The notes below the pieces were generated by a model. It made no database searches. It was not told where the DNA came from and saw nothing but the letters and a program-made list of their open reading frames with translations. A program made the position numbers and the translations under genes. Positions 24,841-40,191 of a stretch of 64,000 nucleotides of DNA are shown here, piece by piece. The stretch lies in IMG/VR virus record IMGVR_UViG_3300035212_003113, positions 248,001-312,000 of that record. One strand, written 5' to 3'. The first letter of the stretch is position 1, and the number at the start of each line of letters is the position of its first letter.

Positions 24841-27800
24841 GCAAATACCCAGCAAATCTAGATGACGATTCTTCGCTACCATCTGTTATAGATGGCTCGA
24901 CAGAGATAAGCGGCGAAGTAATCAATGCTCTAAAAGATGCCGTACTGGCAGTCCAGCGTGCTATTGGTGCGGACCCTCAGGGTGTCCTTGCTGACCTAGT
25001 CACAAGGCTTGCCGTGTCCATCAATGACGACGGCACCCTTAAGTCTAGCGCACTGGTTGTTGCCGCTATAGTGAATGGCCAGATTGCAGCAGCAGCAGGT
25101 ATCGAGGAGTCTAAACTTGCCCTCGATTTCTCCACGCAATTCCTGCGCGATCAGATAACATCAAATGACATAGATATCCAGGCTCTCCAGGCAGGCCTGG
25201 CGCAACTTATTGCTGACTTCTCCAGTCATCATCTAAGCGGTGCTTTTCCGCATGACTCTGAGCAGATTCTGCTCGATTCTGACTTCCCAGCATCTACACC
25301 GCCGTGGCTGACCGGTATAGTCGGCACGACCGTCGCTGACGCTATACGCGAGCTGGCCGATGCACTTGCTTCACACACCTCTCCATCAGCAGTGGCCGCT
25401 CATCAAGCGTCCAGTATATCTGTCTCTGCGACGTTTAGCCACATCACTGCCAACAATGTCCAGGATGCACTTGAGCAACTAGAGTCTCAGCGCAGCACTG
25501 AGCTGGAGCGCCACCTAGATGATGCGCACTCAAATGGCATCTCTGCATGGGAAAATGATCCCATGGGCTGGAATCGCAATTTGCAGCTGTATCCTGTCTC
25601 CGGCACCACTGCTGCGACAGTGATATCTCGCTACGTCATCGATTTTGGCTCGGATGCACTCGCTTCTTTCAGGGTTGCTCGTGGAGAGGTACTCGTATTT
25701 AATGACGAGGCCTACGTAATCTCTGATGTTGGTCCGCGTACAGGTACAGGCTCAAAGCCCACTCTCGACGGCACCCAGCTAGAGCTCTTTAGGCCACTGC
25801 CGGTGTCCTCCGGAGTTATACAGGCAGCGATCTTTGGCAGATCAAGTGTATCAAATCTAAAGGTAGCTCTGGCCGCTACTGCATTTCCTGGTACAGCGAC
25901 TGCTGATACCGTTCTCCTGGCACGGCCGAATGCTGCAAAGGCAGTTAGCCTCGGGCTGAAGCCGCTTTTCATCGACTCGCTGTGCGAGTTGCATCTTGAG
26001 GTTTCTACCGGCACTGCGACAAGTAAAGCAGTAGTGATTGACAATCTGCACCTTGATAGAACAGGGACCTTGGCAGTGACAAAGGTTAGCGCTGCCAGTG
26101 TTGCAGATAGAATTAATTATGTTTTGTGTAGTGCTGCAGAGGGCAACTTTATACCTGCTGCTGCGTATGTCATAGGCAGCGAGATTGCAATAGTACATAA
26201 TTGGTCTGACTCTGCAGATTACTGGCTCAAGATAACAGGCACGACCGCGGCTGCGGCTCGTGGCGCCGAGCTATGTGGCTTTGGCAGTAATGGTGCTGGC
26301 CTAGTTGGGTTCCGCAGCTATCCGAGCATAACTGGTAGATTCTCGGTAAATGGCATAACGCATCAGGATTTCGCCTCGTACTATGCTGGCGCTGCATCTA
26401 TATCCGGTAACACTATCGACATAGGTACTCCCACTGCTCCGCTTGGCATTCTTCCTGGTCATGTTGTACACGTTATAACTGCTAGTACGCACCCAGAGAT
26501 CGGTTCATACCAAATAACTGCAGTTGGCCCAAATACCGTTCAAATCGGCGTAGCCTTGACAGCAACTGCGACAGGAGTAGTCAGAATAGATGCCTCTTCA
26601 GTTTCGCTCGCCGATCTAGATGGCTCACCGAATGCGATAATAAGCGAGATTTTCGTTGATCGCGATGGCTTTACTGGTGCATTTACTCGAGCTTCTGCGC
26701 AGGAAGGTATTTCCGGCGCTGAGCTGATTGACATCTCAGACTCTCGCCTGGCTGGCACCGAGACGTTGCTGGGCACCTCTCCATCTGCAGGACAGGTTGC
26801 ACTGCAATTCAGTGGCGCTGCCGACTCTAATAAGCGCACACTACGGACCAGTCTCGCCGGTCGCACTCGCATCTATGATCGGACCGGCATGTCATGGGCT
26901 GACTTCGCACTAACCGGTGCCCTTGGCACTGGCAGTACGCAACTGCAATTCTTTGATCATACGGATGAAGAGGAGTTGTTGGAAATTGCCGCCGTTCGCT
27001 TCTTTGATCGCAGGGTGCGCTCAGTAAGCGACAAGCGTCTTTTTGGTAGCCTTGGTCTAGACGAGCTGCGAGAGGACGTCACACAGGCATACGTGGAGAC
27101 GCCACTTGCCGAGTTGCGCAGCAGCGGTGTTGTTCGTGGATTTAGTATCCTGGCTGACAACATTGATGGACCTAGTGTATCGCCCAACTATCCCGCAGGC
27201 ACCCTCATGGTGCTTCTGGATGGCGGCGTCGCCTATGTAGATGGTGTCCGTGTCGAGCAGACGTCTCAGTACGCTGCAATTCCGCCTGTTGATGGTACTT
27301 ATTTTGTATGCATCAACGTAGGCGGAATGTTTCAGGTAATAAGCGACACGGACTTTTCGCTTGCCGAGATAATTGAAGGCCTTGCAGGCTCACTTGTGCC
27401 GTTGCTTTCAGTTGAACGAACCGCGACTCCACAAATCGAGAGCACTGTCGTCGCGTACAATATCGCTAATATTGACGAGCGCATAGATGCAGTACTTGAC
27501 CTGACAAATAACTTTGTCGGCAACTTCTCAACAATAGCGGCAGCAATAGCATACCTAAATGCATATCCTTTTGAAGAGCGCTCACGACTTCGAATCGTTA
27601 GTCGTCGCGCGTCGGACAATATTTCGATTGCCGGCCTCACTGCGCCTGTGTCAATCAGTGTAGATGGCTACCTAGGACAGATCTCCGTATCATCTGACTG
27701 CGCGGTTAGCTCTGATACGTTTGCTGGGCGCGCGGAGCCGCATGTCACTACACTCGTGGTCAATACAGAGAGATTTGTCGCTAATAATCTGATACTCAGC

Positions 27801-30800
27801 TCGGTCAATATCGATCTCGCTGGAATTAGTGGCGGCTCATATGTATTTGAAAATTGCGAATTCCTAGAGGGTGCCTCGATATCTGTGGCCGGATCATTTG
27901 GACTCGGCTCACTCGTATTCAAGAATTGCAGCAGCCGAGGCGGCACATTTGCGCTACAGTGCAGTACTACTGACGGTTCTATAAAGATCTCTGGCTGCAG
28001 CTTTTCTGCGACACCGGCCACGTCTTCGTCGGCTCACGGCGGCTCAATCAGTATCACTGCAGCTTCATGTAGTGTCGAGGACACCAGCCTGGTGGGCGTT
28101 GGCTTCACATGGGGCGGCAGCGGCACAGAGTTCGGTCTCGCGGTATCTAATCTAGAAATAACCGATGTCTCGGTAACATCTGCAAGAAGCGGCTTCACAT
28201 GCGCATCTGGTCATGCGATGATAAACGATCTTCGCGTGCGTCGGTCGTATCGCCAATCTGGCTCAATAGTCGATCTAGGGCAGACAGTTACTTCGCGGAT
28301 TGCGGGTCTGCTTATAGATACCTGCGAAGTGCAGTTTACTGTAGGCGTCGCCTCGCTACTGCGCGGTGGTGGCGAGTCAGTGCTGGATGGAGCGGTTGTA
28401 TCAGAGCTAAGCATGCCTGCTCCTGCATCAACCGATCCACATATTGCGATACCGAATGTATTTGGTTTCCTGTATGATGGCCCCGAGATCATATCCATTG
28501 TCGCAGACAATATTTCGGAATCGGTCGGAGTCGGATCGTCGAGCACGAGTGGTGCAGACGGCATAACAGGCTCATCTGCTGAGTCGTCACTTCAGCCTGG
28601 CATCTCTGGCCTAAGTATAAGCGCGAGCGATCTTCCCCTTGGATCTGGTTATGTACTAAGCGGCAACACCATTTCTGGATATCTTGCTGGCCAGAGCGTC
28701 CTGGTTCCTTCGGTATCTGGACTGGCTGATAGAGGACTGCTGCAGTCACATGTTAACCAGTCAGGCATTCTTGCTGTGTCGTATCGAGTTCAGAAGCGCC
28801 CCGATGTTTCTGATCCGGTTGACGTAGGCTTTATAAAAATTGTAGATGTTTCTGACGATCATCCTCTAACGCCGTCTACAGGTTCATTCTCTACTGGCTA
28901 TCAGTTGACCTATTCGGGTGGCGAGTTATCATGGGCGCTTGGCGAGCCGGTCACACCAGTGCTGAGTACTACGCATCGACTTTATACGTCTGACTACAGT
29001 GGTTGGATTGATGTGTACATTTCTTCGGCGCCTACTGGCAGTGGCACCGACCTGTACCGCGTATTGCCTTCTGTGAGAGATGCAGGCAAGCTGCTTCTTG
29101 GTCACTACTGGTGGGATGGGGCTGCCGTACTAGGCACGCCTGTGGACAAGAGGTACTTTGGGAATGTCGCAGGTAATAGCCTTGCTGATAGCGCTCGGGC
29201 CCCGGAGCTCCTATCGACCGCTGATACTCGTGGCGCTAGCATATTTTCCGGAGGCCTGACGGTTACTGATTCTGGCATAGGCCTCAATGCAGTTAGAATG
29301 TATGGGCCAATGACTGCATATGTCGATGGTCGTCGTTTTGCCGTGCCACTGAGGGTCGGAACAGACAGCGTCAACAGTGGTCGTGGTGGTTACGGCGGCA
29401 TAACAATGCCGGGTGCAGACAACTATATCTATGTAGATTCTTCTGGCGTGCTACTCATTGATGCCTTAGCATGGCCTACTGCGGTGCATGCCAAGGTCGC
29501 GAGAGTGCAGGTCTCGGGCGGCGCAGTTACAAGTATAGATGACTTTAGGGAGTCTTCTGTTTTCTTAACGTCCGGATTATCAGAAGAGTGGCGCATAAGT
29601 GCAACTCCTTCTGCGCTTGGAATAAACTCCAATGCCATTGGAATCCAGAAGACGCTTAACATAGCCAATCTCGGCTTAACCACTCTTAATCTTGGCTCAG
29701 GTACAGGGGCATCGACTGTTGCCATCAATAGTGCCGTGGCCACCGTATCGCCTAGGCTTGATACTAATGGAGGGATTGGGATATCTAGTGGCAATACGCT
29801 TAATATAGGAAATGTTTCCAATATAACATCTGCCGGTGGAATAAATATTGGTACACTGAATGCAACAGGCTACATAACTCTCGGAAGAGATGACTATCTT
29901 ACTCCTGCTATATCGCTGTATTCTGCTGGGAATGCTATCGTATCAAAAGGAGGCCCGGTTTTGATTGGGTCTTTCGCAGAGGGACTGGACAGTTCTCTCA
30001 TATATCAGTACACGTATAGCGATGATGGTGGCACTGAGGTCATAATGCAGTCGCCCGCTCCTGGCTCTGCGGATGATACAAAGATCTCGAATGCGATATC
30101 CAGAGGTTCGACATCCGCCAGTATAGCGATGACCATACCAAACGGTGGTTCTGCAAGCAGCCTAGCCATGGAGGCCAACTACATCTCACTTGAAGGCTCT
30201 ACAGGTGGCGTAAGCATAGTAGGAGACATGAGTATATCAGGAGATATACTTGGTAATCTTGATGTACAGCAGGACCTTTTCGTTGGAGATGACTTAATAG
30301 TAAGTGACAATGCTAGAATTGTCGGAGACCTTAAGCTGGAACCAGATCCGACGAACGGCGTCATCTGGAGGTACGTAAGTGTGCCGACTGTGCCTGCTCA
30401 CTATATAGCTCAAGTGGATTTCCCTGGGGCAGAAACTGATCTACCTTCGAGCCCTTTTGATTTTAAAGATGAGTTTGGTAGCTTTAATAGTGCTGCTGCA
30501 GGATATATCGGCATAGTGGATATAACCAGATTTTTGGGAGAATTTCCTCATATCAGGCAGATAGAAGTAAGTGTCGAGAAACTAAATGTGACTGGAGGTG
30601 AGAACTTCAGAATGGCACTTATAAATGAATTCGGACAGAAGCTTGGGATTGCCACAGGTGGTACCGTTACTGTCTCAATTACAGGGGCTTCTGCTGCTGG
30701 CTGGTTCTCAAATGGCACTTATCAAACGTACATAGGGTATGAAGATCCTATGACAGTGGGTACTTCATATGAGGCAACAATTACGTACAATGTCACTGAT

Positions 30801-31007
30801 TTTACAGAAGGAACAGGGCTAGGGAATTTGATCCTCACAAGAGATTTTGTCACATCGGCTCTGTATGGTTCTAATCCGTCCAAAAAAGTTTATCTTGCAT
30901 GGAGGGCTAAAGACGGGGCAGCTAACAATCAATGGCTGATAAATTACATTAGATTAAAGGTAGGAAACTATAATCTAAATTCTGCACTTAGTATAACGTC
31001 TTTCTAG
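24837..31007 (+). CDS. Giant tail fibre/tailspike paralog (2056 aa)
   Basis: ATGA overlap with the upstream gene. N-terminus is clearly homologous to the upstream gene (MSKYP.NLD..LPSVIDGSTEISGEVINA.KDA); has a beta-helix-like middle and a beta-rich tip. Confidence 0.7.
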   Translation: MSKYPANLDDDSSLPSVIDGSTEISGEVINALKDAVLAVQRAIGADPQGVLADLVTRLAVSINDDGTLKSSALVVAAIVNGQIAAAAGIEESKLALDFSTQFLRDQITSNDIDIQALQAGLAQLIADFSSHHLSGAFPHDSEQILLDSDFPASTPPWLTGIVGTTVADAIRELADALASHTSPSAVAAHQASSISVSATFSHITANNVQDALEQLESQRSTELERHLDDAHSNGISAWENDPMGWNRNLQLYPVSGTTAATVISRYVIDFGSDALASFRVARGEVLVFNDEAYVISDVGPRTGTGSKPTLDGTQLELFRPLPVSSGVIQAAIFGRSSVSNLKVALAATAFPGTATADTVLLARPNAAKAVSLGLKPLFIDSLCELHLEVSTGTATSKAVVIDNLHLDRTGTLAVTKVSAASVADRINYVLCSAAEGNFIPAAAYVIGSEIAIVHNWSDSADYWLKITGTTAAAARGAELCGFGSNGAGLVGFRSYPSITGRFSVNGITHQDFASYYAGAASISGNTIDIGTPTAPLGILPGHVVHVITASTHPEIGSYQITAVGPNTVQIGVALTATATGVVRIDASSVSLADLDGSPNAIISEIFVDRDGFTGAFTRASAQEGISGAELIDISDSRLAGTETLLGTSPSAGQVALQFSGAADSNKRTLRTSLAGRTRIYDRTGMSWADFALTGALGTGSTQLQFFDHTDEEELLEIAAVRFFDRRVRSVSDKRLFGSLGLDELREDVTQAYVETPLAELRSSGVVRGFSILADNIDGPSVSPNYPAGTLMVLLDGGVAYVDGVRVEQTSQYAAIPPVDGTYFVCINVGGMFQVISDTDFSLAEIIEGLAGSLVPLLSVERTATPQIESTVVAYNIANIDERIDAVLDLTNNFVGNFSTIAAAIAYLNAYPFEERSRLRIVSRRASDNISIAGLTAPVSISVDGYLGQISVSSDCAVSSDTFAGRAEPHVTTLVVNTERFVANNLILSSVNIDLAGISGGSYVFENCEFLEGASISVAGSFGLGSLVFKNCSSRGGTFALQCSTTDGSIKISGCSFSATPATSSSAHGGSISITAASCSVEDTSLVGVGFTWGGSGTEFGLAVSNLEITDVSVTSARSGFTCASGHAMINDLRVRRSYRQSGSIVDLGQTVTSRIAGLLIDTCEVQFTVGVASLLRGGGESVLDGAVVSELSMPAPASTDPHIAIPNVFGFLYDGPEIISIVADNISESVGVGSSSTSGADGITGSSAESSLQPGISGLSISASDLPLGSGYVLSGNTISGYLAGQSVLVPSVSGLADRGLLQSHVNQSGILAVSYRVQKRPDVSDPVDVGFIKIVDVSDDHPLTPSTGSFSTGYQLTYSGGELSWALGEPVTPVLSTTHRLYTSDYSGWIDVYISSAPTGSGTDLYRVLPSVRDAGKLLLGHYWWDGAAVLGTPVDKRYFGNVAGNSLADSARAPELLSTADTRGASIFSGGLTVTDSGIGLNAVRMYGPMTAYVDGRRFAVPLRVGTDSVNSGRGGYGGITMPGADNYIYVDSSGVLLIDALAWPTAVHAKVARVQVSGGAVTSIDDFRESSVFLTSGLSEEWRISATPSALGINSNAIGIQKTLNIANLGLTTLNLGSGTGASTVAINSAVATVSPRLDTNGGIGISSGNTLNIGNVSNITSAGGINIGTLNATGYITLGRDDYLTPAISLYSAGNAIVSKGGPVLIGSFAEGLDSSLIYQYTYSDDGGTEVIMQSPAPGSADDTKISNAISRGSTSASIAMTIPNGGSASSLAMEANYISLEGSTGGVSIVGDMSISGDILGNLDVQQDLFVGDDLIVSDNARIVGDLKLEPDPTNGVIWRYVSVPTVPAHYIAQVDFPGAETDLPSSPFDFKDEFGSFNSAAAGYIGIVDITRFLGEFPHIRQIEVSVEKLNVTGGENFRMALINEFGQKLGIATGGTVTVSITGASAAGWFSNGTYQTYIGYEDPMTVGTSYEATITYNVTDFTEGTGLGNLILTRDFVTSALYGSNPSKKVYLAWRAKDGAANNQWLINYIRLKVGNYNLNSALSITSF

Positions 31008-32749: not shown

Positions 32750-32849
32750 CATCTTGCAATAAATAAAAATCTACTCGAGATAATCGGTGTACCGATCAAT
32801 TAATGTTTTTTTAACAGGCTAGAGCTGAACCAGCACTTTGGGGTCTTTA

Positions 32850-35411
32850 ATGGCAAATATTCCAGGAATCAATACTCGCGTCCGCCCCGGCGTTTTCGTC
32901 AGACAGAGAGTTCGCACCAATACCGTCAGCATTGCTGGCGGTCTGCGCACTACCCTCATCATGGGCGAGGGCCGCGCAGAGGAGACTCTTGCGTTCCAGG
33001 CCCGCGGTGGCGGCCTCGACGGCGTAAATCCCGACTTCAGCGGCAATACAAATGCTCCGGATGGCCGTCACTTCCAGATCTCCCAGATTGATCTAGTTCC
33101 GAATCGTACCGATATTCGCAAGAATGGCGTTGCTCTGCGCGTACTGGAGCAATCAATCACTGCAGGCGCATTTGACTCGCGCTATGACGTTCGTGTTGAC
33201 CCGCTAACTGGCCGCGTTCAGCTCCAGGGCGCTAGCCTCCAGGACTTCGGAACAGAGAGCGGCCTACCAGTCTATTACAAGCGTTTTGCCTCGAACTCGG
33301 GTAACGGAACCCTTGATGTCTCGACTACCTCGCTTCTCAGCACGAATGCACAGCCAGAGACCTGGACCGTGCGCTGCACTGCTGTTTCAAAGGACGGCAC
33401 CGGCACGATAATCCCTGGTCGTGCTCTTTTCTCGGTAACCGGTTCGGTAACCGGCGCTGTTCGTGATACGGCTGGCGACCAGATTCGCTGGAAGTCAGAC
33501 GGCAATTCGTACAGCAACGGCGTTCTGCAGTTCTCGATCACCGAGGGCAGCCAGCCATTCAACGTTGGTGATAAGTTCGTCGTCACTGTTAATAGCGGCG
33601 TACTTGTAACCGGCGACAGCCTTGACGCTGTTTATATCGCAAATTCTTTTGTAAACGATCCTCAGGAATTCTTCTCTCCTACCGATCTGTACGCGAAGCA
33701 CGGCCAGCCCAGCGAAGACAACACTCTTGCTCTCGGCGCTGCCATGGCATTTGAGAACGGCGCAGCTTCTGTAGTTGCGCTACAGTGCAAGCCACCGGTT
33801 CCGCGTCAGACCTCAGAGCTGCTTATGGCAGCTGACAATCCCCTTAGCATAGAGGTCGAGGGCGCAACTGGTAACGAGGACATGGAGGATTGCATTTTCG
33901 CAATCAATGGCGGCGGCACCCCCGACACCGACTCCAAGATCAATGTTTTTGTAGTCAACCCGGACGGCAGCGAAGAGCAGATCCGTACGCTTGACAAGGC
34001 AGAGTTCTATGACCCAGCCAATGGCGACTCGATGCTCGCGGTCTACACGAACTTCTCCGCAGTAGCTACAAACTCCTACACGGCAGTCATGCTGCTTGAG
34101 ATGCTCCAGGAGGGCACCGACGGCTATGTCTATGACCTAGGCGGCGACACGTTCTTCCAGACAACCACGGGCGTATTCTCGGCCAGCGATGTTGGCAACT
34201 TCATCGATATCTTCGATGCTGGCGCAACCAACACCTTTGGTCGCTACGAGATCCTAGATGTTGGCGACGGCTACGGCGCGACCGGAATTGTCAAGGTGCT
34301 GCTGAATACGTCTGTTACCGGCTCAGTTGCCCAGAGTGGCAGCGATCTGCGCTGGTTCCTGCTCAACAGTGACACCGAGAGCAGCTCGGCATACTTCTGC
34401 CTGAGCGATGACATTGTTGACCTGCACCTCACGGCTGGCAAGGGCCTCCGCATTCAGTACGTAGACGTTGACGATGCAGATTATTTTGACACGAATTGGC
34501 TGCAGGGTTACCAGGCTGCCGAGCAGGTAGACGTACAGTTTGTTGTCCCTCTCCCCCGTCAGGCTATTAGCAATATCTTTGCCGCTGGCAAAGCACACGT
34601 TCTTTCTCAGAGCACGATTCTGAATGCTCAGGAGCGCATCCTGATCTGCGGTGCAATCAATGGTCTGGTACCAGAGAATCTGACTGGCGCCGAAGATGCA
34701 GCAGTTGAAAATATCGGCATCTTCGAGGGCATCCAGGGCGATGATCCGCAGGAAGTGCTAGACGGCGACATCGAAGATCTTGCCAACTACTCGGTACTTG
34801 ATGCATTCGGCGACACGCAGCGCGTCATCTATGTCGGCCCCGACCAGATTGTTCGTAATCTCGGTGCCGCAGGCAATACCGTTCTCTCGGGCTACTTCAT
34901 GGCTCCGGCTCTTTCCGGCTACCTGAGCGCCAAGTCGTTTGTTGCAGAGCCTGCCACAAATAAGACTCTTGCTGGCTTCTCTATCCCGCGTTCACGTTCG
35001 TATCGCCCAAGCGTCGTAAACAGCCTTATTGCTGCAGGCGTATGCTTGCTAGAGCCGGTTGCTGGTGGTGGCCGCATTGTTCATGGTATTACGACTGCTT
35101 CCTCGGGCGCAGCTGAAGACGAAGAAATCTCGATTGTAGAAGTTCGCGACTACGTCGTACGCGTTCTGCGAAATGGCCTGCGCAGCTTTGTCGGCCGTAT
35201 CAATTCACCAACAATTCTACAGGAGCTTTCTGCTGCTGTTGACAAGATCATGCGCGCAATGGAGACACAGGGACTTATAACGGGCTATGCCGACATTGTC
35301 GTCTCAATTAATCCCACAGATGCGCGTCAGGTAGATATCGGCGTTCGCGCATTCCCAGCGGGTCCGCTAAACTACGTGTTTGCCGATATAGAATTCACGC
35401 TAGGCGGCTGA
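32850..35411 (+). CDS. Contractile tail sheath protein with insertion domains
   Basis: N-terminal RPGVFVR; C-terminal LIAAGVCLLE..RIVHGITT..EISIVEVRDYV..FVGR..VDIGVRAFPAGPLNYVFADIEF is the sheath C-terminal signature. ATG 32850 is preferred over TTG 32838. Confidence 0.9.
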   Translation: MANIPGINTRVRPGVFVRQRVRTNTVSIAGGLRTTLIMGEGRAEETLAFQARGGGLDGVNPDFSGNTNAPDGRHFQISQIDLVPNRTDIRKNGVALRVLEQSITAGAFDSRYDVRVDPLTGRVQLQGASLQDFGTESGLPVYYKRFASNSGNGTLDVSTTSLLSTNAQPETWTVRCTAVSKDGTGTIIPGRALFSVTGSVTGAVRDTAGDQIRWKSDGNSYSNGVLQFSITEGSQPFNVGDKFVVTVNSGVLVTGDSLDAVYIANSFVNDPQEFFSPTDLYAKHGQPSEDNTLALGAAMAFENGAASVVALQCKPPVPRQTSELLMAADNPLSIEVEGATGNEDMEDCIFAINGGGTPDTDSKINVFVVNPDGSEEQIRTLDKAEFYDPANGDSMLAVYTNFSAVATNSYTAVMLLEMLQEGTDGYVYDLGGDTFFQTTTGVFSASDVGNFIDIFDAGATNTFGRYEILDVGDGYGATGIVKVLLNTSVTGSVAQSGSDLRWFLLNSDTESSSAYFCLSDDIVDLHLTAGKGLRIQYVDVDDADYFDTNWLQGYQAAEQVDVQFVVPLPRQAISNIFAAGKAHVLSQSTILNAQERILICGAINGLVPENLTGAEDAAVENIGIFEGIQGDDPQEVLDGDIEDLANYSVLDAFGDTQRVIYVGPDQIVRNLGAAGNTVLSGYFMAPALSGYLSAKSFVAEPATNKTLAGFSIPRSRSYRPSVVNSLIAAGVCLLEPVAGGGRIVHGITTASSGAAEDEEISIVEVRDYVVRVLRNGLRSFVGRINSPTILQELSAAVDKIMRAMETQGLITGYADIVVSINPTDARQVDIGVRAFPAGPLNYVFADIEFTLGG

Positions 35412-35432: not shown

Positions 35433-36107
35433 ATGGGCTACCCCTATACTGGATCATCTACAACATCGGCTACCAGCACCGGCCTATCTACACAGATAAT
35501 TGTGAAGGTAGACGGCGTCGCTGTCGGCGGTATTCAGACAATGAATATCGACCAACGCCGTGACGTACAGAGAATAACGGAAGTTGGCACAGACGGCACA
35601 ATCGAGCTTGTTCCGCGCAGCGCGACGACCTTTGAGCTAACGATTGATCGCATTTACTTTGATCGCAAGACGATCACAGAGGCTCTAAACCGCCAGTTTA
35701 TCAACATTCAGTCACAGCGTTACCCGTTCGATATCTACGTCTACGACATGCATAATGTGACCGCTGCGAGCGTATCGTCAGCTGCCGGTGGCGAAGCAGA
35801 TACCGGTGCATTTGACGTGGCTCCTAATGCAACCGCAGGTATCATGGTAACTGTGTACGAGAATTGCTGGATTACGAGCAAGCGTGAGTCGTACACGACC
35901 AGCGACTACGTTATTACCCAGAACGTAGCTGTTGCTGCCGAGTTCTGTCACACGTTCATGGACAACGCTAATACAAGCGTTGCAGACGCCCGCGGTCCAG
36001 CTCTTGATGATAGCGAAGAGGGCAAGCTGCGCAAGCTCGAGCGCCTCGTTGACCGCGCTCGTCCGGGCAGCCTTGACGCCCGTGGCGTTGGCGGCGTAGT
36101 ATTCTGA
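35433..36107 (+). CDS. Tail tube protein
   Basis: Follows the sheath gene; strong AGGAG SD; IIVKVDGVAVGGIQ..RITEVG..ELVP..ELTIDRI..VYENCWI pattern; terminator downstream. Confidence 0.8.
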   Translation: MGYPYTGSSTTSATSTGLSTQIIVKVDGVAVGGIQTMNIDQRRDVQRITEVGTDGTIELVPRSATTFELTIDRIYFDRKTITEALNRQFINIQSQRYPFDIYVYDMHNVTAASVSSAAGGEADTGAFDVAPNATAGIMVTVYENCWITSKRESYTTSDYVITQNVAVAAEFCHTFMDNANTSVADARGPALDDSEEGKLRKLERLVDRARPGSLDARGVGGVVF

Positions 36108-36200: not shown

Positions 36201-36857
36201 GTGGAAAAGAATAAACCAGGCAAAACGCCATTCATTCATCCGAGCTTAGCGTCGGCAAATACCCCAAATCCAACACCGGCTCAGCGCGGCAAGTCGCGCA
36301 TCGCCCCAGGTGCAGCGCGCGGCGTAGTCATCGAGCACGAGGCTCCACCAGAAACCGCTTCTTCGCGTTCGTCTATTCCGCCAGAGCTACTAGTGTCTCC
36401 GCCACAGCAGGAACCAGATGCTCCTACGGGGGAAGCTGCAAAGATTGAGCAGCGCAAGCATGATGTGATCAACAGGCTATTGCTATTTACCCAACCTATG
36501 TACAAGACCGTGGAGCTAGGCGGCATGCAGTTCCGTTTCAAGGTTATGACTCCTTCGGACACAGCACACGTCATCAAGATCTTTAATGCCATGCCAGAGG
36601 ACGAGCAGACGCTTATGCGCAACCGCATCCTGAATCTGGCTGCCGCTCTCATCGATGTAGACGGCGTATCACTTGAGTCGATTTACAAGGGCACGCTTTC
36701 ACGAGACGTTGTACTGATGCGCTACTCAGAGCTGATGAAGTGGAGTAATCCTGTGCTTAACGGCGTGCTCGCTGCGCATGATAAGCTGCTAGAGGATATG
36801 AAGCAGGAGTATCTGCCGGATTTTCTCAAGCAGCCGAAAAAGGAGAGCACCGGCTGA
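36201..36857 (+). CDS. Tail assembly chaperone (lambda G analog)
   Basis: Lies between tube and tape measure genes; GAGGAG SD with GTG start; pattern FRFKVMT..RILNLAAALIDVDG..W..PVLNGVL. Confidence 0.75.
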   Translation: MEKNKPGKTPFIHPSLASANTPNPTPAQRGKSRIAPGAARGVVIEHEAPPETASSRSSIPPELLVSPPQQEPDAPTGEAAKIEQRKHDVINRLLLFTQPMYKTVELGGMQFRFKVMTPSDTAHVIKIFNAMPEDEQTLMRNRILNLAAALIDVDGVSLESIYKGTLSRDVVLMRYSELMKWSNPVLNGVLAAHDKLLEDMKQEYLPDFLKQPKKESTG

Positions 36858-36881
36858 TTTGGCAGATGAGTAAAGCTCTCC
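36805..36881 (+). other. Putative programmed -1 ribosomal frameshift signal
   Basis: Internal AGGAG at 36805-09; slippery G GAT TTT at 36818-24; stem 1 CAGCCG 36831-36 / CGGCTG 36851-56; stem 2 GGAGAGC 36842-48 / GCTCTCC 36875-81. Confidence 0.75.
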
Positions 36882-37162
36882 ACAAGCACCCATGGGAGTT
36901 GGGGATTGAAACAATGTCCCCGCTCCTTCTTGCTTGGTACAGGTCCAATATAGACAGAGATGCCAAAGAACAGGCAGATGATTATATAGCAATAGCGGAG
37001 TATTTAGCTAGCTTCTCGAACCCAAAGGCCGTAGAGCAGGTACAAAGCGCTCGTCGGCGCCCCAAAGAAGAAACAAGCGAAGGTATGCTGCGGACTCTGC
37101 GTGCAATCTCCGGCAAGCATCTGACCGACGAGCAAATCAAAAAGAACATTACTCAGAAGTAG
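36866..37162 (+). CDS. Second tail chaperone segment (lambda T analog), probably expressed mainly as a frameshift fusion
   Basis: In the -1 frame relative to the upstream gene and open back to 36785; no properly spaced SD before ATG 36866; directly precedes the tape measure gene. Confidence 0.7.
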   Translation: MSKALHKHPWELGIETMSPLLLAWYRSNIDRDAKEQADDYIAIAEYLASFSNPKAVEQVQSARRRPKEETSEGMLRTLRAISGKHLTDEQIKKNITQK

Positions 37163-37169
37163 GCGATAA

Positions 37170-39314
37170 GTGGACGACATTAGCCTTGAAAATATTCAAA
37201 AGCTGCTTTCTCAGTCTGGTAATTCCGATACCAAGGTTGACGATGGCACTTTGAACAAGCTAAAAGATTGGGCCAACAAGGCGTCTAAGCTACTAACGGG
37301 CATGGGCTTTGATTCGTCAGAGATGAAGAATAAGATTACGGATGCCCTTGTCTCAGCGGGCAAAAAAGGCATCAGCGGCATCAATGAGCTTCTGAAGAGT
37401 ACGATTGGTCAGGGCTTTACCGTAGACACTGTTTATAATATGCTCGGCCTTGATACTTTCAAGGCTGATGCAGAAAATACTCTTGGTGCCTTAAAGGGCG
37501 TGCTACAGGATACTGGTATAATTCCAATAGAACTTTCACTTGACTCTGCCGAGGTTCAAGTAGAAAAACTGAAGGAAATGATAGGGAAAGGCGGTCTCAG
37601 CAAGCTGGCCATATCTTTTGGCGCAACCAAGCTCGCTGACCAGTTGCGCACGGTAAGGACACAATACACCGAGCCACTAACCAAGGATCTGGATGATTTA
37701 AGAATTACAGCAGGCGCTATTTTTGCAGTGAGGTCAAATCCATTCGGGGCGATTCGTGAAGATGTGACCGCGAGCACAGAATCTCTTAAGGTTTTTCAGC
37801 AAAAGTTTGCCAGAGAGGCCATTGCCTTGCAGTTCAGTCTAGGTATCGATGCTACTGACGCCAAGCGAGAGCTGCAGAGTGTCTACGCTGGGCTTGATGA
37901 TTCTCTTAGGCAGTTGTCTGGATTCTCTATAAAGAGTGGTGATCAAAACATTGAGGGTGCTGAGGCGGTAGTTGTCGCTGCGAAGGCAATTGGAGTCGAG
38001 GTACAAGAAATCACAGGCGATATAAATGAGATGACTTCTCGCTTTGGGCTTTCTGGAGAGCAGGCCGCCGAGAGAATAATGACTATAGGTAAGGCATCTG
38101 CCGCCTCTGGTCTTAGCATGAGGGCCTTCAAAGATCTTGTTATGGACAGCGCCGGTCAGTTTGGCAGCTTTGGAGATGCCACAGAGGAGTCTGCCGCACT
38201 GCTTGAGCGCTTTACAAAGAACGCCAGCCGTGAGCGCATGAAGGCCGTAACTGATGCATTCAAGGGCGTTGCTAGCGGAATAGCAGGTATGACGGATGAG
38301 ATGAAAGCATTCGTCTCTATGGGTACCGAACTTTCTGGTGGCGGCGGTGCAATTGAGTCCATAGTGCGCTTAGAAGAGGCCATGCAGTCTGGTGACAAAG
38401 ATGCTCTTCAGGGCATTTTTGATGAGACGATGGCCAGGATCGAGGAGCTCACGGGCTCGCCGCTCATGACCATGCAGGAGGCCGTTTCGTCCGGCCAAGA
38501 AAGTACATTTTATCAGCAGGCTGCTCTTGCAAAGCAATTCGGCTTCGCAGGAAACCGGGCGCAAGCGAGCGACGTATTCTCTGCATACCGAACAGGCACA
38601 GTTGACATAGGTGATATCAAAGACCGCCAGATGCCAGCTGATCTTGGTACGCAGGCTAGAGAGAAGATGGCCGGTCAGATGGGTGCCGGCGAGATGGCTG
38701 AGAACTTGCTGCGCGGAGTAGCTGCTCAGCAAAAATTCAATGCTCTCTGGGCAGATACGACAACCTCTTTCATGGCCCAGACACAGGATCTTGGTAAAAA
38801 GTTAGTGGACATAACTGGTCAATTTACTAAAGCTGAGGACATAATCTCTGCATACGTTAGTGATCCTAAGTTAAAGCAGGCTGCGGCTGGCAAAGATGTA
38901 CCCAAGGGCACTACTCGAGAGACTGCAGCCTCTGCCATGGAGGCTCAGGGGACGGCAGGGGTAGGTAGGACTGGAACGATGACAGAGGCGCAGGCCTATG
39001 CAGGTGTCGTAATAGATGCTTCGCGTTTTGAGGCCGGGCTCGTGGCAGGCATTACTCCTGCTGTCAGCGCATCTATAGCTGCTGCAACCGCTGCTATTAC
39101 AGAAACAGTGATAAAGAACGCCTCAAATGCTGCTGCGGGCGGGGCTGCAGGTGTCATCCCCGCTGCTGCCGTAGTTGGTGCTAATCAGCCACCCGTCAAT
39201 ATCCAGGTAGAGGTAACCGTCAAAGGAAGCGATCTAAAAGACATGATCGAAGTCAAGGCTAAGCCAATCGCTGCCCAAGCGGCGCGCTGGTCTGCCGGCA
39301 TGCCCAATCCGTAA
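37170..39314 (+). CDS. Tape measure protein
   Basis: 714 aa, predominantly helical and Ala/Gly/Glu-rich, following the chaperones; GTG start. Confidence 0.75.
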   Translation: MDDISLENIQKLLSQSGNSDTKVDDGTLNKLKDWANKASKLLTGMGFDSSEMKNKITDALVSAGKKGISGINELLKSTIGQGFTVDTVYNMLGLDTFKADAENTLGALKGVLQDTGIIPIELSLDSAEVQVEKLKEMIGKGGLSKLAISFGATKLADQLRTVRTQYTEPLTKDLDDLRITAGAIFAVRSNPFGAIREDVTASTESLKVFQQKFAREAIALQFSLGIDATDAKRELQSVYAGLDDSLRQLSGFSIKSGDQNIEGAEAVVVAAKAIGVEVQEITGDINEMTSRFGLSGEQAAERIMTIGKASAASGLSMRAFKDLVMDSAGQFGSFGDATEESAALLERFTKNASRERMKAVTDAFKGVASGIAGMTDEMKAFVSMGTELSGGGGAIESIVRLEEAMQSGDKDALQGIFDETMARIEELTGSPLMTMQEAVSSGQESTFYQQAALAKQFGFAGNRAQASDVFSAYRTGTVDIGDIKDRQMPADLGTQAREKMAGQMGAGEMAENLLRGVAAQQKFNALWADTTTSFMAQTQDLGKKLVDITGQFTKAEDIISAYVSDPKLKQAAAGKDVPKGTTRETAASAMEAQGTAGVGRTGTMTEAQAYAGVVIDASRFEAGLVAGITPAVSASIAAATAAITETVIKNASNAAAGGAAGVIPAAAVVGANQPPVNIQVEVTVKGSDLKDMIEVKAKPIAAQAARWSAGMPNP

Positions 39315-39324
39315 AAACTAACAC

Positions 39325-40191
39325 ATGGTAGACAATAAAAGATTCCTAATAAACAAGACCGGTCTCACTGCAGCCTATCGCACGCAGCGTGACGTAATCA
39401 TATGGCGTACGCCTGGTCTTGGTTTTATAGAGATGTACATAAATCCGCAACAGGTACGCATCTCGCAGCGCAAGGTCTCCACGTCTACTCGCACTAAAGC
39501 AGGTTTTGTCTACCAGTATGCTGGTGAAGATTTGACAACTATCGCTATAGATGGCACAACCGGCAGCGCTGGTATAGAAGGCATAAATCTTCTTGAGAAA
39601 GTGTATCGTGCCGAGCAGATAAGATTTGAGCAGATTGCTTCTACTACAGAGACACAGCAAGCCCTTGGTAATGCAGGTTCTTCAATAGGCTCCGCCTTTA
39701 CGAGTGCATTTGGCTCACCTAATTCAAATTCGCCAGTAGATATTTTTGGCTCTGTCTTAGAGTTCGGTAGCAATCTTATTGGAGCCGATCCTTTTGAGCA
39801 GCCGTATCCAACTCTAGCAACTCTTGCATCAGCAGTAGAGATGAACTACCAGGGCGTTACATATCGTGGTTATTTTACTGAGTTTTCTTATACGGAAAGC
39901 GCTCAGAGTCCGGGTCTATTTGACTACAACATATCTTTCACATCTTACGCAAAGAGTGGCGAGCGTCTTAACTTTATGCCATGGCACAGGCGCCCTGATG
40001 GTCAATCCAACAGCGACAGACTGGATAATTTCAGTATCTCTGATGTGACTGATCCAAATGCCCCTCCAGAAACAGATGCTAATTCTGGTGCTCCTCCTGT
40101 CGATACTTCTGGAATCCAGAAGGCTCTTGCTGGCAGAAAGTTAATCGGCATTGGCGCGTTTACCGGAGAGGACTTGACCGATAATGAATAG
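39325..40191 (+). CDS. Tail tube initiator / baseplate organiser
   Basis: MYINPQQVRISQRK..RTKAG..QYAGEDLTTIAIDGTTG..YRGYFTEFSYTESA..FDYNISF pattern, directly after the tape measure gene. Confidence 0.65.
   Translation: MVDNKRFLINKTGLTAAYRTQRDVIIWRTPGLGFIEMYINPQQVRISQRKVSTSTRTKAGFVYQYAGEDLTTIAIDGTTGSAGIEGINLLEKVYRAEQIRFEQIASTTETQQALGNAGSSIGSAFTSAFGSPNSNSPVDIFGSVLEFGSNLIGADPFEQPYPTLATLASAVEMNYQGVTYRGYFTEFSYTESAQSPGLFDYNISFTSYAKSGERLNFMPWHRRPDGQSNSDRLDNFSISDVTDPNAPPETDANSGAPPVDTSGIQKALAGRKLIGIGAFTGEDLTDNE

What the first reader, a model, noticed from the sequence alone, without database searches (positions are those of the whole stretch)
36785..37162. Complete -1 frameshift cassette with an H-type pseudoknot in the tail chaperone gene
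Seen: in-frame G GAT TTT (36818-24); AGGAG 8 nt upstream; a 6-nt spacer; then stem 1 CAGCCG/CGGCTG (36831-36/36851-56) whose loop GGAGAGC (36842-48) is perfectly complementary to GCTCTCC (36875-81). The -1 frame is open from 36785 and reads SQAAEKGEHRLIWQ straight into the 36866 ORF, giving an approximately 320-aa fusion versus the 218-aa product. Established: G/GT frameshifting before tape measure genes is widespread (lambda GGGAAAG); GGAUUUU is the RCNMV slippery site; an upstream SD stimulates dnaX frameshifting. Having SD, slippery site and a eukaryotic-virus-style pseudoknot together in a large myophage is, to my knowledge, uncommon.
Basis: partly seen in the sequence, partly recalled or inferred. 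Interest (0 to 1): 0.75.

Follow-up and report, generated by a model that had tools for sequence, protein, structure and literature searches.

The report
Tail-chaperone -1 frameshift in jumbo phage
A giant lake-water phage almost certainly makes a short and a long form of its tail-assembly helper protein by letting a fraction of ribosomes slip back one base on a run of U's, which is the well-known phage "G/GT" trick, here with an unusually weak slip site and a conserved but unproven RNA structure next to it.

Summary

Seventeen related loci (38-99.5% protein identity) give strong support for a programmed -1 frameshift.
- The downstream ORF is always in the -1 frame.
- Its ATG at 36866 is not conserved.
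- Codon-position variation switches from frame 0 to frame -1 across the site.
- Three deep relatives have a -1-frame stop directly before the T run, which pins the shift there.

The conserved core is U_UUU (36821-24): GAT and TTT never vary, against 0 of 27 control codon columns.

The RNA part is only partly supported.
- Synonymous-site diversity falls from about 36795 to 36890, which matches the cassette.
- Stem 1 (core 5 bp) is kept family-wide.
- Stem 2 exists only in the closer clade.
- No pair shows compensatory change.
- A nested fold is about as stable as the pseudoknot.
- The deep clade uses a different hairpin.

Verdict: a real but ordinary G/GT-type frameshift in an uncultivated 372-kb phage. 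The pseudoknot is plausible but unproven.

The parts
35433..36107 (+). tail tube gene (context)
   Evidence: It follows the sheath gene (32838-35411; PHROG tail sheath families and Pfam Phage_sheath_1C). It matches phrog_985 virion structural protein. The order is the same in all long relatives.
36201..36857 (+). ORF A, the 218-aa 'G'-like tail assembly chaperone candidate (frame 0); stop UGA at 36855-57
   Evidence: It sits between tube and tape-measure-sized genes. It has 15 close and 57 representative homologs, none longer than 253 aa. It has no Pfam or PHROG match. Atlas look-alikes include Phage_TAC_5 and Phage_TAC_1 at 0.84-0.86, which is a lead only.
36805..36809 (+). SD-like AGGAG, 8 nt before G_GAT_TTT and 11 nt before U_UUU
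   Evidence: It is present in the window and kept in the closer clade. The GAG codon at 36807 is GAG in 16 of 17 sequences, against 14/17 and 12/17 at other invariant Glu columns. The synonymous-diversity trough starts near 36795. It is absent in L008 and weak in L002. The phage's genes do use SD sequences.
   Evidence: TTT is found in 17/17 sequences, and GAT in 16/17 with GGT in the other, so the third base T is invariant. In contrast, 0 of 27 other invariant-residue codon columns have an invariant codon. T_TTT_TTA/G occurs in L002, L008, L019, L012 and L004. In L002, L008 and L019 a -1-frame TGA directly precedes the T run. L017 has G_GGT_TTT.
36831..36856 (+). stem 1 hairpin: CAGCCG 36831-36 paired with CGGCUG 36851-56, 14-nt loop
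   Evidence: Its energy is -9.2 kcal/mol. The 5-bp core 36831-35/36852-56 pairs in 14-15 of 15 sequences and is the RNAalifold consensus. Four of six pairs never vary and none changes on both sides. The 3' arm is constrained by coding in two frames.
36836..36842 (+). second candidate shift site G_AAA_AAG (A_AAG tetramer), in the loop of stem 1
   Evidence: It is in frame in the window and 9 other sequences. It is replaced by AAA GAG in five sequences and by AAA GCG, AAA ACG or AAG ACG in the deep clade. A_AAG is the most efficient tetramer in E. coli (PMC4066793).
36842..36881 (+). stem 2: GGAGAGC 36842-48 paired with GCUCUCC 36875-81 (pseudoknot with stem 1, or base of a nested hairpin)
   Evidence: The duplex energy is -11.6 kcal/mol. 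It has 7 bp in most of the closer clade, 5 bp in L004 and L012, and none in L002, L008 and L019. The four-fold sites 36877 (T in 11/11) and 36880 (C in 10, T in 1) are kept, against 2 of 46 such sites elsewhere in A and B.
36824..37162 (+). -1-frame extension ('T' part, 112 aa) of the 320-aa fusion; includes the annotated 98-aa ORF 36866-37162
   Evidence: The -1 frame is open in all relatives from the T run on. Codon-position variation follows frame -1 from 36857, including the 19 codons before the conserved ATG at 36914. The ATG at 36866 is ATT, CTG or TTA in relatives. Neither 36866 nor 36914 has an SD.
36894..36927 (+). second conserved hairpin inside the T part, holding the conserved AUG 36914 at the 3' end of its loop (role unknown)
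   Evidence: Its MFE is -13 to -25 kcal/mol with z from -1.1 to -6.4 in 13 relatives, and the arm sequences differ between clades.
37170..39314 (+). 714-aa tape-measure candidate (context)
   Evidence: It is assigned by position. It is followed by 39325-40191, which matches Pfam PF23980 Phage_tail_tube_init at 30.2 bits, above the cut-off of 27. Relatives show the same order.

Best explanation
ORF A (36201-36857) and the ORF after it are the G and T parts of a lambda G/GT-type or P2 E/E+E'-type tail assembly chaperone pair in a 371,675-bp contractile-tailed phage from lake water.

Most ribosomes read A to its UGA at 36855-57 and release the 218-aa protein. A minority slip back one base while tRNA-Phe sits on UUU (36822-24) and re-pairs with UUU (36821-23). 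They then read UCU CAA GCA and onward in the -1 frame to 37162, giving a 320-aa fusion with the junction ..LPDF|SQAAEK...

The site is a single-tRNA U_UUU tetramer. It derives from a canonical U_UUU_UUA/G heptamer that deep relatives still carry. A weak motif of this kind needs help, and the likely helpers are an RNA structure starting 6 nt downstream and perhaps the SD-like AGGAG upstream. The structure is stem 1, possibly locked into a pseudoknot by stem 2.

Shown by comparative data: the frame switch, its position, and nucleotide-level selection on the T run and on about 95 nt around it.

Inferred: the tRNA register, any role of the SD-like element, which fold forms, the efficiency, and the chaperone function of the proteins.
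For: Gene order: sheath, tube, A, B, 714-aa protein, tail tube initiator. This order holds in the window and in all long relatives.

Frame arrangement:
- B is in the -1 frame in every one of 17 loci, and no A homolog among 57 representatives exceeds 253 aa. The stop of A is therefore always kept.
- Mean pairwise difference by codon position is 0.20/0.08/0.55 in frame 0 up to 36784.
- It is still frame-0-like in 36785-36820.
- It is flat and low in 36825-56.
- It is 0.24/0.17/0.40 in frame -1 for 36857-36913, upstream of any conserved start.
- The ATG at 36866 is not conserved and has no SD.

Position of the shift:
- -1-frame stops occur upstream of the T run in many relatives, and directly before it in L002, L008 and L019. 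The shift must therefore lie between 36821 and 36857.
- TTT is found in 17/17 sequences and the preceding third-position T in 17/17. In contrast, 0 of 27 control columns have an invariant codon.
- Five sequences in four lineages carry canonical T_TTT_TTA/G. TTTTTTG is the P2 site (PMC3091744).
- A 99.5%-identical variant carries G_GGT_TTT.
- x-F-L close to the C-terminus is conserved across the wider family, with x being D, S, N, A, T or V.

Motif class: in E. coli, U_UUU is the third-best tetramer and works only with a strong downstream stimulator (PMC4066793).

RNA-level constraint:
- Synonymous diversity is 0.5-0.6 in A. It falls to about 0.3 from 36795, to 0 across 36819-56, and stays at 0.14-0.30 to about 36890.
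- The four-fold sites in the stem 2 3' arm are kept.
- Deep relatives have a different stable hairpin, 6 nt after their heptamer, at -15.5 to -19 kcal/mol.
Against: - There is no protein-level evidence.
- A and B have no Pfam or PHROG match, and the AlphaFold model (pLDDT 57) has no significant PDB match. The HK97 chaperone 2ob9 is only rank 26 at E 2.1. The chaperone identity therefore rests on synteny and the frameshift itself.
- In the window the heptamer is non-canonical in either register.
- Conservation in 36825-56 is also expected from coding in two frames.
- No compensatory base-pair change supports any of the three folds tested.
- The host and its tRNA and anti-SD properties are unknown.
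Confidence: 0.8

Rival explanations
1. The full cassette exactly. G_GAU_UUU is the heptamer, and an H-type pseudoknot (stem 1 plus stem 2) acts as the stimulator together with the upstream SD.
For: - All elements are present with canonical spacing.
- Joint chance expectation is low.
- Stem 2 3'-arm synonymous sites are unusually conserved, and the diversity trough ends just after 36881.
- The summed helix energies (-9.2 and -11.2 kcal/mol) are comparable with the nested MFE of -17.0.
- Loop lengths of 5, 2 and 18 nt are sterically feasible (inference).
- The lineage with a canonical heptamer (L004, L012) has the weakest stem 2.
- U_UUU needs a strong stimulator in E. coli.
Against: - No pair changes on both sides, and stem 2 is absent in the deep clade.
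- The first G of the heptamer is not conserved.
- RNAfold prefers stem 2 plus an inner stem (36853-60 with 36864-71). That inner stem excludes stem 1 and pairs in 89% of cells.
- The SD-like motif is explained in part by preferred codons CAG and GAG.
- The tools used cannot score pseudoknots.
Confidence: 0.3
2. In this phage most shifting happens at G_AAA_AAG (36836-42) by tRNA-Lys slippage, giving the junction ..QPKK|GEHR... The T run is then a relic, or a second and weaker site.
For: - A_AAG is by far the most efficient tetramer in E. coli (PMC4066793).
- The motif is in frame and lies inside the window where the shift must occur (36821-57).
- It is present in 10 of 17 sequences.
- P-site AAA to GAA re-pairing would keep two pairs plus a possible G-U pair (inference).
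Against: - The motif is not conserved. It is AAA GAG in five sequences and has other codons in the deep clade.
- The T run, in contrast, is invariant at synonymous sites.
- No SD-like element lies 10-14 nt upstream.
- No stable structure starts 5-9 nt downstream, and stem 2 would begin inside the ribosome.
Confidence: 0.12
3. There is no frameshift. B is translated on its own from ATG 36866 or from the conserved ATG 36914, and the frame overlap is incidental.
For: - Gene callers call an 82-aa ORF from the conserved ATG in relatives.
- A conserved hairpin around that ATG could regulate a start.
Against: - The ATG at 36866 is not conserved.
- Neither ATG has an SD at a working distance.
- The 19 codons before 36914 evolve as -1-frame coding sequence.
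- The -1 frame is open back to the T run in all 17 loci, and selection acts on the T run.
Confidence: 0.04
4. Transcriptional slippage on the T run (loss of one U in the mRNA), rather than ribosomal slippage, yields the fusion.
For: Homopolymer runs can cause polymerase slippage, and the deep relatives have six T's.
Against: The run is only four T's in the window and in most relatives. Bacterial polymerase slippage usually needs runs of about 8-9 or more (established knowledge; discussed in PMC5009743). No RNA data were available, because all runs found are DNA contigs.
Confidence: 0.02

Closest known systems
Phage lambda G/GT tail assembly chaperone frameshift, and the conserved frameshift of long-tailed dsDNA phages (Levin 1993; Xu, Hendrix and Duda 2004; reviewed in PMC5009743)
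   Same: - Two ORFs lie between the major tail/tube gene and the tape measure gene.
- The second is in the -1 frame without its own start.
[quoted passage not shown]
- Short and long products share an N-terminus.
- The arrangement is conserved despite low sequence similarity.
   Different: - Lambda uses G_GGA_AAG and needs no flanking stimulator, whereas here the site is a U_UUU tetramer with apparent RNA-level constraint around it.
- A is longer (218 aa) and has a conserved N-terminal peptide and a disordered linker.
- There is no detectable sequence or fold similarity to known chaperone families.
Phage P2 E / E+E' frameshift at TTTTTTG (PMC3091744, citing Christie 2002)
   Same: Both are contractile-tailed phages, and both shift -1 on a T run. 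L004 has exactly T_TTT_TTG, and L002, L008, L019 and L012 have T_TTT_TTA.
   Different: P2 and its relatives have no downstream hairpin. The window phage has lost the second half of the heptamer (T_TTT_CTC) and shows a conserved structured region.
IS3-type bacterial -1 frameshifting on a Z_ZZN tetramer with a downstream pseudoknot (PMC4066793)
   Same: Both involve single-tRNA slippage on a tetramer that is barely shifty alone and depends on a strong 3' stimulator a few nucleotides downstream. U_UUU and A_AAG are among the working tetramers.
   Different: - The gene context is different (transposase).
- The pseudoknot here is only predicted.
- Efficiency is unknown.
E. coli dnaX tripartite signal (upstream SD, A_AAA_AAG, downstream stem-loop)
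   Same: Both have the layout of an SD-like element about 10 nt upstream, a slip site, and a structure 6 nt downstream.
   Different: - The slip motif is different.
- The SD-like element here is only partly conserved and is confounded by coding.
- The comparison rests on recalled knowledge of dnaX and was not tested here.
Plant-virus G_GAU_UUU sites
   Same: The window and six relatives have the identical heptamer, and structured RNA lies downstream.
   Different: - Those are eukaryotic ribosomes and RNA viruses.
- The first G is not conserved in this phage family, so the resemblance is probably coincidental.

Membership tests
G/GT-type tail assembly chaperone frameshift (Xu, Hendrix and Duda 2004) | Two adjacent ORFs located between the major tail/tube gene and the tape measure gene | tested here: met
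   The order is sheath, tube, A, B, 714-aa protein, then a tail tube initiator (PF23980 at 30.2 bits). Relatives show the same order.
G/GT-type tail assembly chaperone frameshift (Xu, Hendrix and Duda 2004) | The second ORF overlaps the end of the first in the -1 frame and lacks its own conserved start and SD | tested here: met
   B is in the -1 frame in 17/17 loci. The ATG at 36866 is not conserved, there is no SD, and the coding signature extends upstream of the conserved ATG at 36914.
G/GT-type tail assembly chaperone frameshift (Xu, Hendrix and Duda 2004) | A slippery sequence in the overlap, conserved among relatives | tested here: met
   U_UUU is invariant at synonymous sites, against 0 of 27 controls. 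Canonical T_TTT_TTA/G occurs in five sequences.
G/GT-type tail assembly chaperone frameshift (Xu, Hendrix and Duda 2004) | Both products are made in a fixed ratio and both are needed for tail assembly | not testable with these tools
   No proteomic or genetic data exist. Only DNA contigs of lake metagenomes were found.
G/GT-type tail assembly chaperone frameshift (Xu, Hendrix and Duda 2004) | Sequence or fold similarity of the first ORF to known chaperone families (Pfam Phage_TAC_*) | tested here: not met
   None of 48 family members has a Pfam match and there is no PHROG match. The model has pLDDT 57 and no PDB match with E below 0.5. The only hint is weak Atlas feature look-alikes, TAC_5 and TAC_1 at 0.84-0.86. 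Known chaperones are very diverse, so this is weak evidence against membership.
H-type pseudoknot-stimulated -1 frameshift signal | Canonical X_XXY_YYZ heptamer | tested here: not met
   The window has G_GAU_UUU or U_UUU_CUC, so only the U_UUU tetramer qualifies. The canonical form occurs in relatives L002, L008, L019, L012 and L004, and in variant L017.
H-type pseudoknot-stimulated -1 frameshift signal | A structure starting 5-9 nt after the slip site | tested here: met
   The spacer to stem 1 is 6 nt in the window. The deep clade has a 6-nt spacer from U_UUU_UUA to a different hairpin.
H-type pseudoknot-stimulated -1 frameshift signal | Loop of stem 1 pairs with downstream sequence (stem 2), supported by covariation | tested here: inconclusive
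   A 7-bp complement is present. No pair changes on both sides, and the complement is absent in the deep clade. Synonymous sites of the 3' arm are conserved. A nested alternative is equally stable.
H-type pseudoknot-stimulated -1 frameshift signal | Frameshifting depends on both stems | not testable with these tools
   This needs reporter mutagenesis.
dnaX-like upstream SD stimulation | SD-like sequence about 10-14 nt 5' of the shift site, conserved beyond coding needs | tested here: inconclusive
   AGGAG lies 8 nt before G_GAU_UUU and 11 nt before U_UUU. GAG is found in 16/17 sequences, and the diversity trough starts near 36795. However, CAG and GAG are preferred codons, and the motif is absent in L008.

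The most novel reading that the evidence does not exclude
In this phage family the stimulatory RNA has been replaced while the slip site decayed. Deep lineages pair a canonical U_UUU_UUA with a simple interrupted hairpin. The window's clade reduced the site to a U_UUU tetramer and compensates with a tripartite signal of an SD-like element plus an H-type pseudoknot. That would be an arrangement not described for phage tail-chaperone frameshifts. A second conserved hairpin 70 nt downstream would be part of the same control.
Probability: 0.25. Interest if true: 0.55.

Novelty: new member of a known kind. Interest (0 to 1): 0.35.

Why it matters
The finding lets two unannotated ORFs of an uncultivated 372-kb freshwater phage be annotated as one frameshifted tail-chaperone gene pair. 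It also defines a small protein family (57 representatives) that current Pfam and PHROG models miss.

Mechanistically, it is a natural series in which a canonical heptamer, a bare tetramer and a one-base variant (G_GGU_UUU) sit in almost the same context with different downstream structures. That makes it a convenient system for testing how slip-site strength and stimulator strength trade off in bacteria.

It does not change what is known about G/GT frameshifting.

Tried and rejected
Searches that found nothing useful:
- Nucleotide and protein searches of GenBank phages with the region, with A, and with distant relatives P0039 and P0061 found nothing. The sheath's best known relative is Bacillus phage G, at 29% identity over its C-terminal 200 aa.
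- Rfam gave no match in 36600-37200.
- Pfam and PHROG gave nothing for A or B.
- The AlphaFold model of A was poor (pLDDT 57) and Foldseek against PDB gave nothing significant.

Attempts to get DNA of mid-distance relatives, to test the idea that x-F-L is encoded NNT TTT TTR:
- Single-protein scans of viral contigs found nothing.
- A degenerate DNA pattern recovered only the two contigs already known, plus chance hits.
- The genome-collection scan found nothing, and the metagenome scan found two loci.

Other dead ends:
- Laying contigs of four lake runs on the site gave only identical fragments and no variants. No usable RNA run was found: 23 of the 24 listed are DNA contigs and the one RNA-typed run (X24) holds 0.05 of the sampled words.
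- I considered the deep clade's hairpin as the family-wide structure and rejected it, because only 62% of cells pair and it fails in the window clade.
- I considered CUC as a hungry codon driving P-site slippage and did not pursue it. CTC makes up 15% of Leu codons in this genome, so it is neither rare nor dominant.
Full report
**What is in the sequence**

- ORF A runs 36201-36857 (218 aa).
- Its last codons read CCG GAT TTT CTC AAG CAG CCG AAA AAG GAG AGC ACC GGC TGA.
- G_GAT_TTT is in frame at 36818-24.
- AGGAG lies at 36805-09, 8 nt upstream.
- CAGCCG (36831-36) and CGGCTG (36851-56) are complementary, and the first follows a 6-nt spacer.
- GGAGAGC (36842-48), in the loop between them, is the exact complement of GCTCTCC (36875-81).
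- The next ORF (36866-37162) is in the -1 frame of A, and that frame is open from 36785.
- A shift at the T run gives 208 + 112 = 320 aa.

**Context**

The window is part of a complete 371,675-bp virus record with terminal repeats. It has 51% G+C and five tRNA genes. It was found in lake-water metagenomes.

The local gene order is as follows:
- a sheath gene (PHROG tail sheath; weak Pfam Phage_sheath_1C);
- a tube gene (phrog_985);
- A, then B;
- a 714-aa protein;
- a gene matching Pfam Phage_tail_tube_init above its cut-off.

This is the classical position of the tail assembly chaperone pair.

A and B themselves match nothing in Pfam or PHROGs, Rfam or GenBank phages. An AlphaFold model of A is poor (pLDDT 57) and has no significant PDB match. 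The HK97 chaperone appears only at rank 26 with E 2.1. ESM-Atlas feature look-alikes include Phage_TAC_5 and Phage_TAC_1 clusters at 0.84-0.86, which the tool itself rates as a lead only.

**Relatives**

A protein search found 15 homologs of A at 38-100% identity. Their DNA, together with loci from contig scans, gave 17 loci, of which 15 are distinct across the cassette. All keep the same gene order. The alignment from about 36456 to 36945 is free of gaps, so window coordinates can be used for every sequence.

**Is there a frameshift?**

Four independent lines say yes.

1. B is in the -1 frame in all loci. None of 57 representatives of the A family in 1.8 billion proteins is longer than 253 aa. 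The stop of A is therefore always kept and no natural in-frame fusion exists.

2. The ATG at 36866 is ATT, CTG or TTA in most relatives. Even so, the -1-frame peptide (..RLIW.x.SKALHKHPWE..) is conserved. Gene callers start B in relatives at a conserved ATG that corresponds to 36914, yet the 19 codons before it evolve as -1-frame coding sequence. Mean pairwise difference at codon positions 1/2/3 there is 0.24/0.17/0.40. Upstream of 36820 the pattern is that of frame 0 (0.20/0.08/0.55 and 0.34/0.14/0.54). Neither ATG has an SD, although 13 of 31 gene starts in the window do.

3. The -1 frame carries stop codons upstream of the T run in many relatives and none downstream of it. In the three deepest relatives (L002, L008, L019; 38-44% identity) a TGA sits immediately before TTTTTT. 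The shift must therefore happen between 36821 and 36857.

4. Within that interval only the T run is conserved.

**Which slip site?**

Phe is TTT in 17/17 sequences. The preceding codon is GAT in 16 and GGT in one, so its third base T is invariant.

As a control, I examined 27 other degenerate codon columns of A with an invariant amino acid. None has an invariant codon. Other Phe columns are mixed TTT/TTC and other Asp columns are mixed GAT/GAC.

The next codon makes a canonical heptamer in five sequences from four lineages:
- T_TTT_TTA in L002, L008, L019 and L012;
- T_TTT_TTG in L004, which is the P2 E/E+E' site (PMC3091744).

Eleven sequences, including the window, have T_TTT_CTC, and one has T_TTT_ATG.

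What is conserved is the tetramer U_UUU with UUU as the frame-0 codon.

In E. coli, Z_ZZN tetramers are barely shifty alone. With the IS3 pseudoknot they rank A_AAG >> U_UUC > U_UUU, at 0.26-5.6% (PMC4066793). That range fits the few-percent level typical of G/GT systems (PMC5009743).

Two further observations fit a T-run site.
- A metagenomic variant 99.5% identical over 2.2 kb differs at 36820 (A to G). This turns the site into the canonical G_GGU_UUU at the cost of Asp to Gly.
- In the wider family the motif x-F-L lies 1-13 residues before the C-terminus down to E about 1e-12, with x being D, S, N, A, T or V. That is what a requirement for NNT TTT TTR would produce. I could not obtain the DNA to test this.

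G_AAA_AAG (36836-42) is in frame and lies inside the permitted interval. A_AAG is the best bacterial tetramer. It is present in 10 of 17 sequences and is replaced by AAA GAG or other codons in the rest. It has no SD-like element at 10-14 nt and no structure at 5-9 nt. I regard it as a possible secondary site in this phage (about 0.12).

**RNA elements**

Synonymous-site diversity in the closer clade (11 sequences) behaves as follows:

| Region | Synonymous diversity |
|---|---|
| A, upstream of ~36795 | 0.5-0.6 |
| ~36795 to 36818 | about 0.3 |
| 36819-36856 | 0 |
| 36857 to ~36890 | 0.14-0.30 |
| from 36893 | 0.45-0.55 |

The stretch 36825-56 is coded in two frames, which alone would suppress variation. 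The flanks 36795-36820 and 36857-36890 are single-coded, so the trough there points to a nucleotide-level function.

The two four-fold sites inside the stem 2 3' arm are T in 11/11 (36877) and C in 10 with T in 1 (36880). Both are compatible with pairing. Only 2 of 46 four-fold sites elsewhere in A and B are that conserved.

The evidence against treating this as proof of the pseudoknot is as follows.
- Of the 13 proposed pairs, none shows a change on both sides, and four of six stem 1 pairs never vary.
- The stem 1 3' arm encodes Gly-stop in frame 0 and Arg-Leu in frame -1.
- Stem 2 is reduced to 5 bp in L004 and L012 and is absent in the deep clade.
- RNAfold's minimum-energy fold for 36825-85 uses stem 2 as the base of a nested hairpin. 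Its inner stem (36853-60 with 36864-71) excludes stem 1.
- That fold is -17.0 kcal/mol. Stem 1 alone is -9.2 and stem 2 alone is -11.2.
- The inner stem pairs in 89% of cells, with only one-sided changes.
- The nested fold starts 17 nt after the T run, which is too far for a classical stimulator. Stem 1 starts after 6 nt.

The deep clade instead has a different interrupted hairpin, CCCAAA.CGGCC / GGCUG.UUUGGG. It has 6 + 5 bp at -15.5 to -19 kcal/mol and starts exactly 6 nt after U_UUU_UUA. It does not form in the window clade.

Every lineage therefore has some stable structure at the right distance, but not the same one. This supports a stimulatory structure in general. It also suggests turnover of that structure, and it leaves the pseudoknot as one plausible form in the window's clade (about 0.3).

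By chance, a 7-nt loop complement within 60 nt occurs for about 3% of loops. A 6-bp hairpin at a 5-9 nt spacing occurs at about 2% of sites in this window.

The SD-like AGGAG is kept in the closer clade, with GAG in 16/17 sequences. It lies at a distance comparable to that in dnaX (recalled knowledge). However, it encodes Q/E-E with the genome's preferred codons (CAG 74%, GAG 63%). It is also missing in L008. The result is inconclusive.

**Comparison with known systems**

Functionally and by position, this is a G/GT-type chaperone frameshift (PMC5009743). It is closest to the P2 type through the T-run site.

It differs from lambda and P2 in lacking a full heptamer and in showing a conserved structured flank. 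For phage chaperone genes such a flank is described as rare (PMC3091744).

The mechanics resemble IS3-type tetramer-plus-structure signals (PMC4066793).

The identity of G_GAU_UUU with plant-virus sites (PMC4737148, PMC5009743) is probably coincidental, because its first base is not conserved.

**Verdict**

The frameshift is real with high confidence (0.8 for the T-run site, and higher for a frameshift somewhere in 36821-57). It is a new member of a well-known kind.

The complete cassette with a eukaryotic-virus-style pseudoknot is not established. The RNA-level constraint is real, but its fold is undecided.

Interest is moderate to low (0.35). The value lies in annotating a family that current models miss, and in a natural series of slip-site and structure variants that could be tested in a reporter.

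Noticed in passing
window 36894-36927: A second stable hairpin (GGGAG.UGGGGA paired with UCCCC.CUCC) lies inside the -1-frame T part, about 70 nt after the shift site. The conserved AUG at 36914 sits at the 3' end of its loop. It is present in all 13 relatives folded, at -13 to -25 kcal/mol with z from -1.1 to -6.4. The arm sequences differ between clades: GGAUCC/GGAUCC in L002 and L008, GCAGGGA/UCCCUGC in L019, and AGGAGAC/GUCUCCU in L004 and L012. Only frameshifted ribosomes cross it. Its role is unknown.
   Followed up: partly
L017:1383 (= window 36820): A metagenomic contig 99.5% identical over 2,228 nt has A to G at this position. This changes Asp207 to Gly and turns G_GAU_UUU into the canonical G_GGU_UUU. 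It is a single contig, so a sequencing error cannot be excluded.
   Followed up: partly
window 36836-36842: G_AAA_AAG is in frame in the loop of stem 1 and may be a second shift site. It is present in 10 of 17 relatives.
   Followed up: yes
proteins P0019-P0072 (family of ORF A): Across 57 representatives the motif x-F-L sits 1-13 residues from the C-terminus. The most distant members (P0059-P0072) lack it and instead end in (L/I/V)K(K/N), which would fit an A-run slip site. Their DNA could not be obtained.
   Followed up: partly
window 36201-36440 (N-terminal 80 residues of A): A has a conserved N-terminal peptide (..KTPFIHPSLA.. and ..AQRGKSRIAPGA..). A proline-rich, poorly conserved, low-confidence linker follows before the folded C-terminal domain. 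This is unlike the short lambda or P2 chaperones.
   Followed up: no
L002, L008, L019 (window-equivalent 36834-36863): The deep clade has its own interrupted hairpin, CCCAAA.CGGCC / GGCUG.UUUGGG. It starts 6 nt after U_UUU_UUA and shares its 3' arm with stem 1 of the window clade.
   Followed up: yes
window 32838-32852: The mechanical ORF for the sheath starts at TTG 32838. The sequence MANIPG.. suggests the real start is the ATG at 32850.
   Followed up: no
whole genome G000 (window = 248001-312000): The phage genome is complete at 371,675 bp, with direct terminal repeats and five tRNA genes (Thr, Met, Ser, Leu-UAA, Gln). Very large virion ORFs lie upstream of the tail module (1554 and 2056 aa at 20176-31007). 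Its sheath's nearest known relative is Bacillus phage G, at 29% identity over 200 aa.
   Followed up: no
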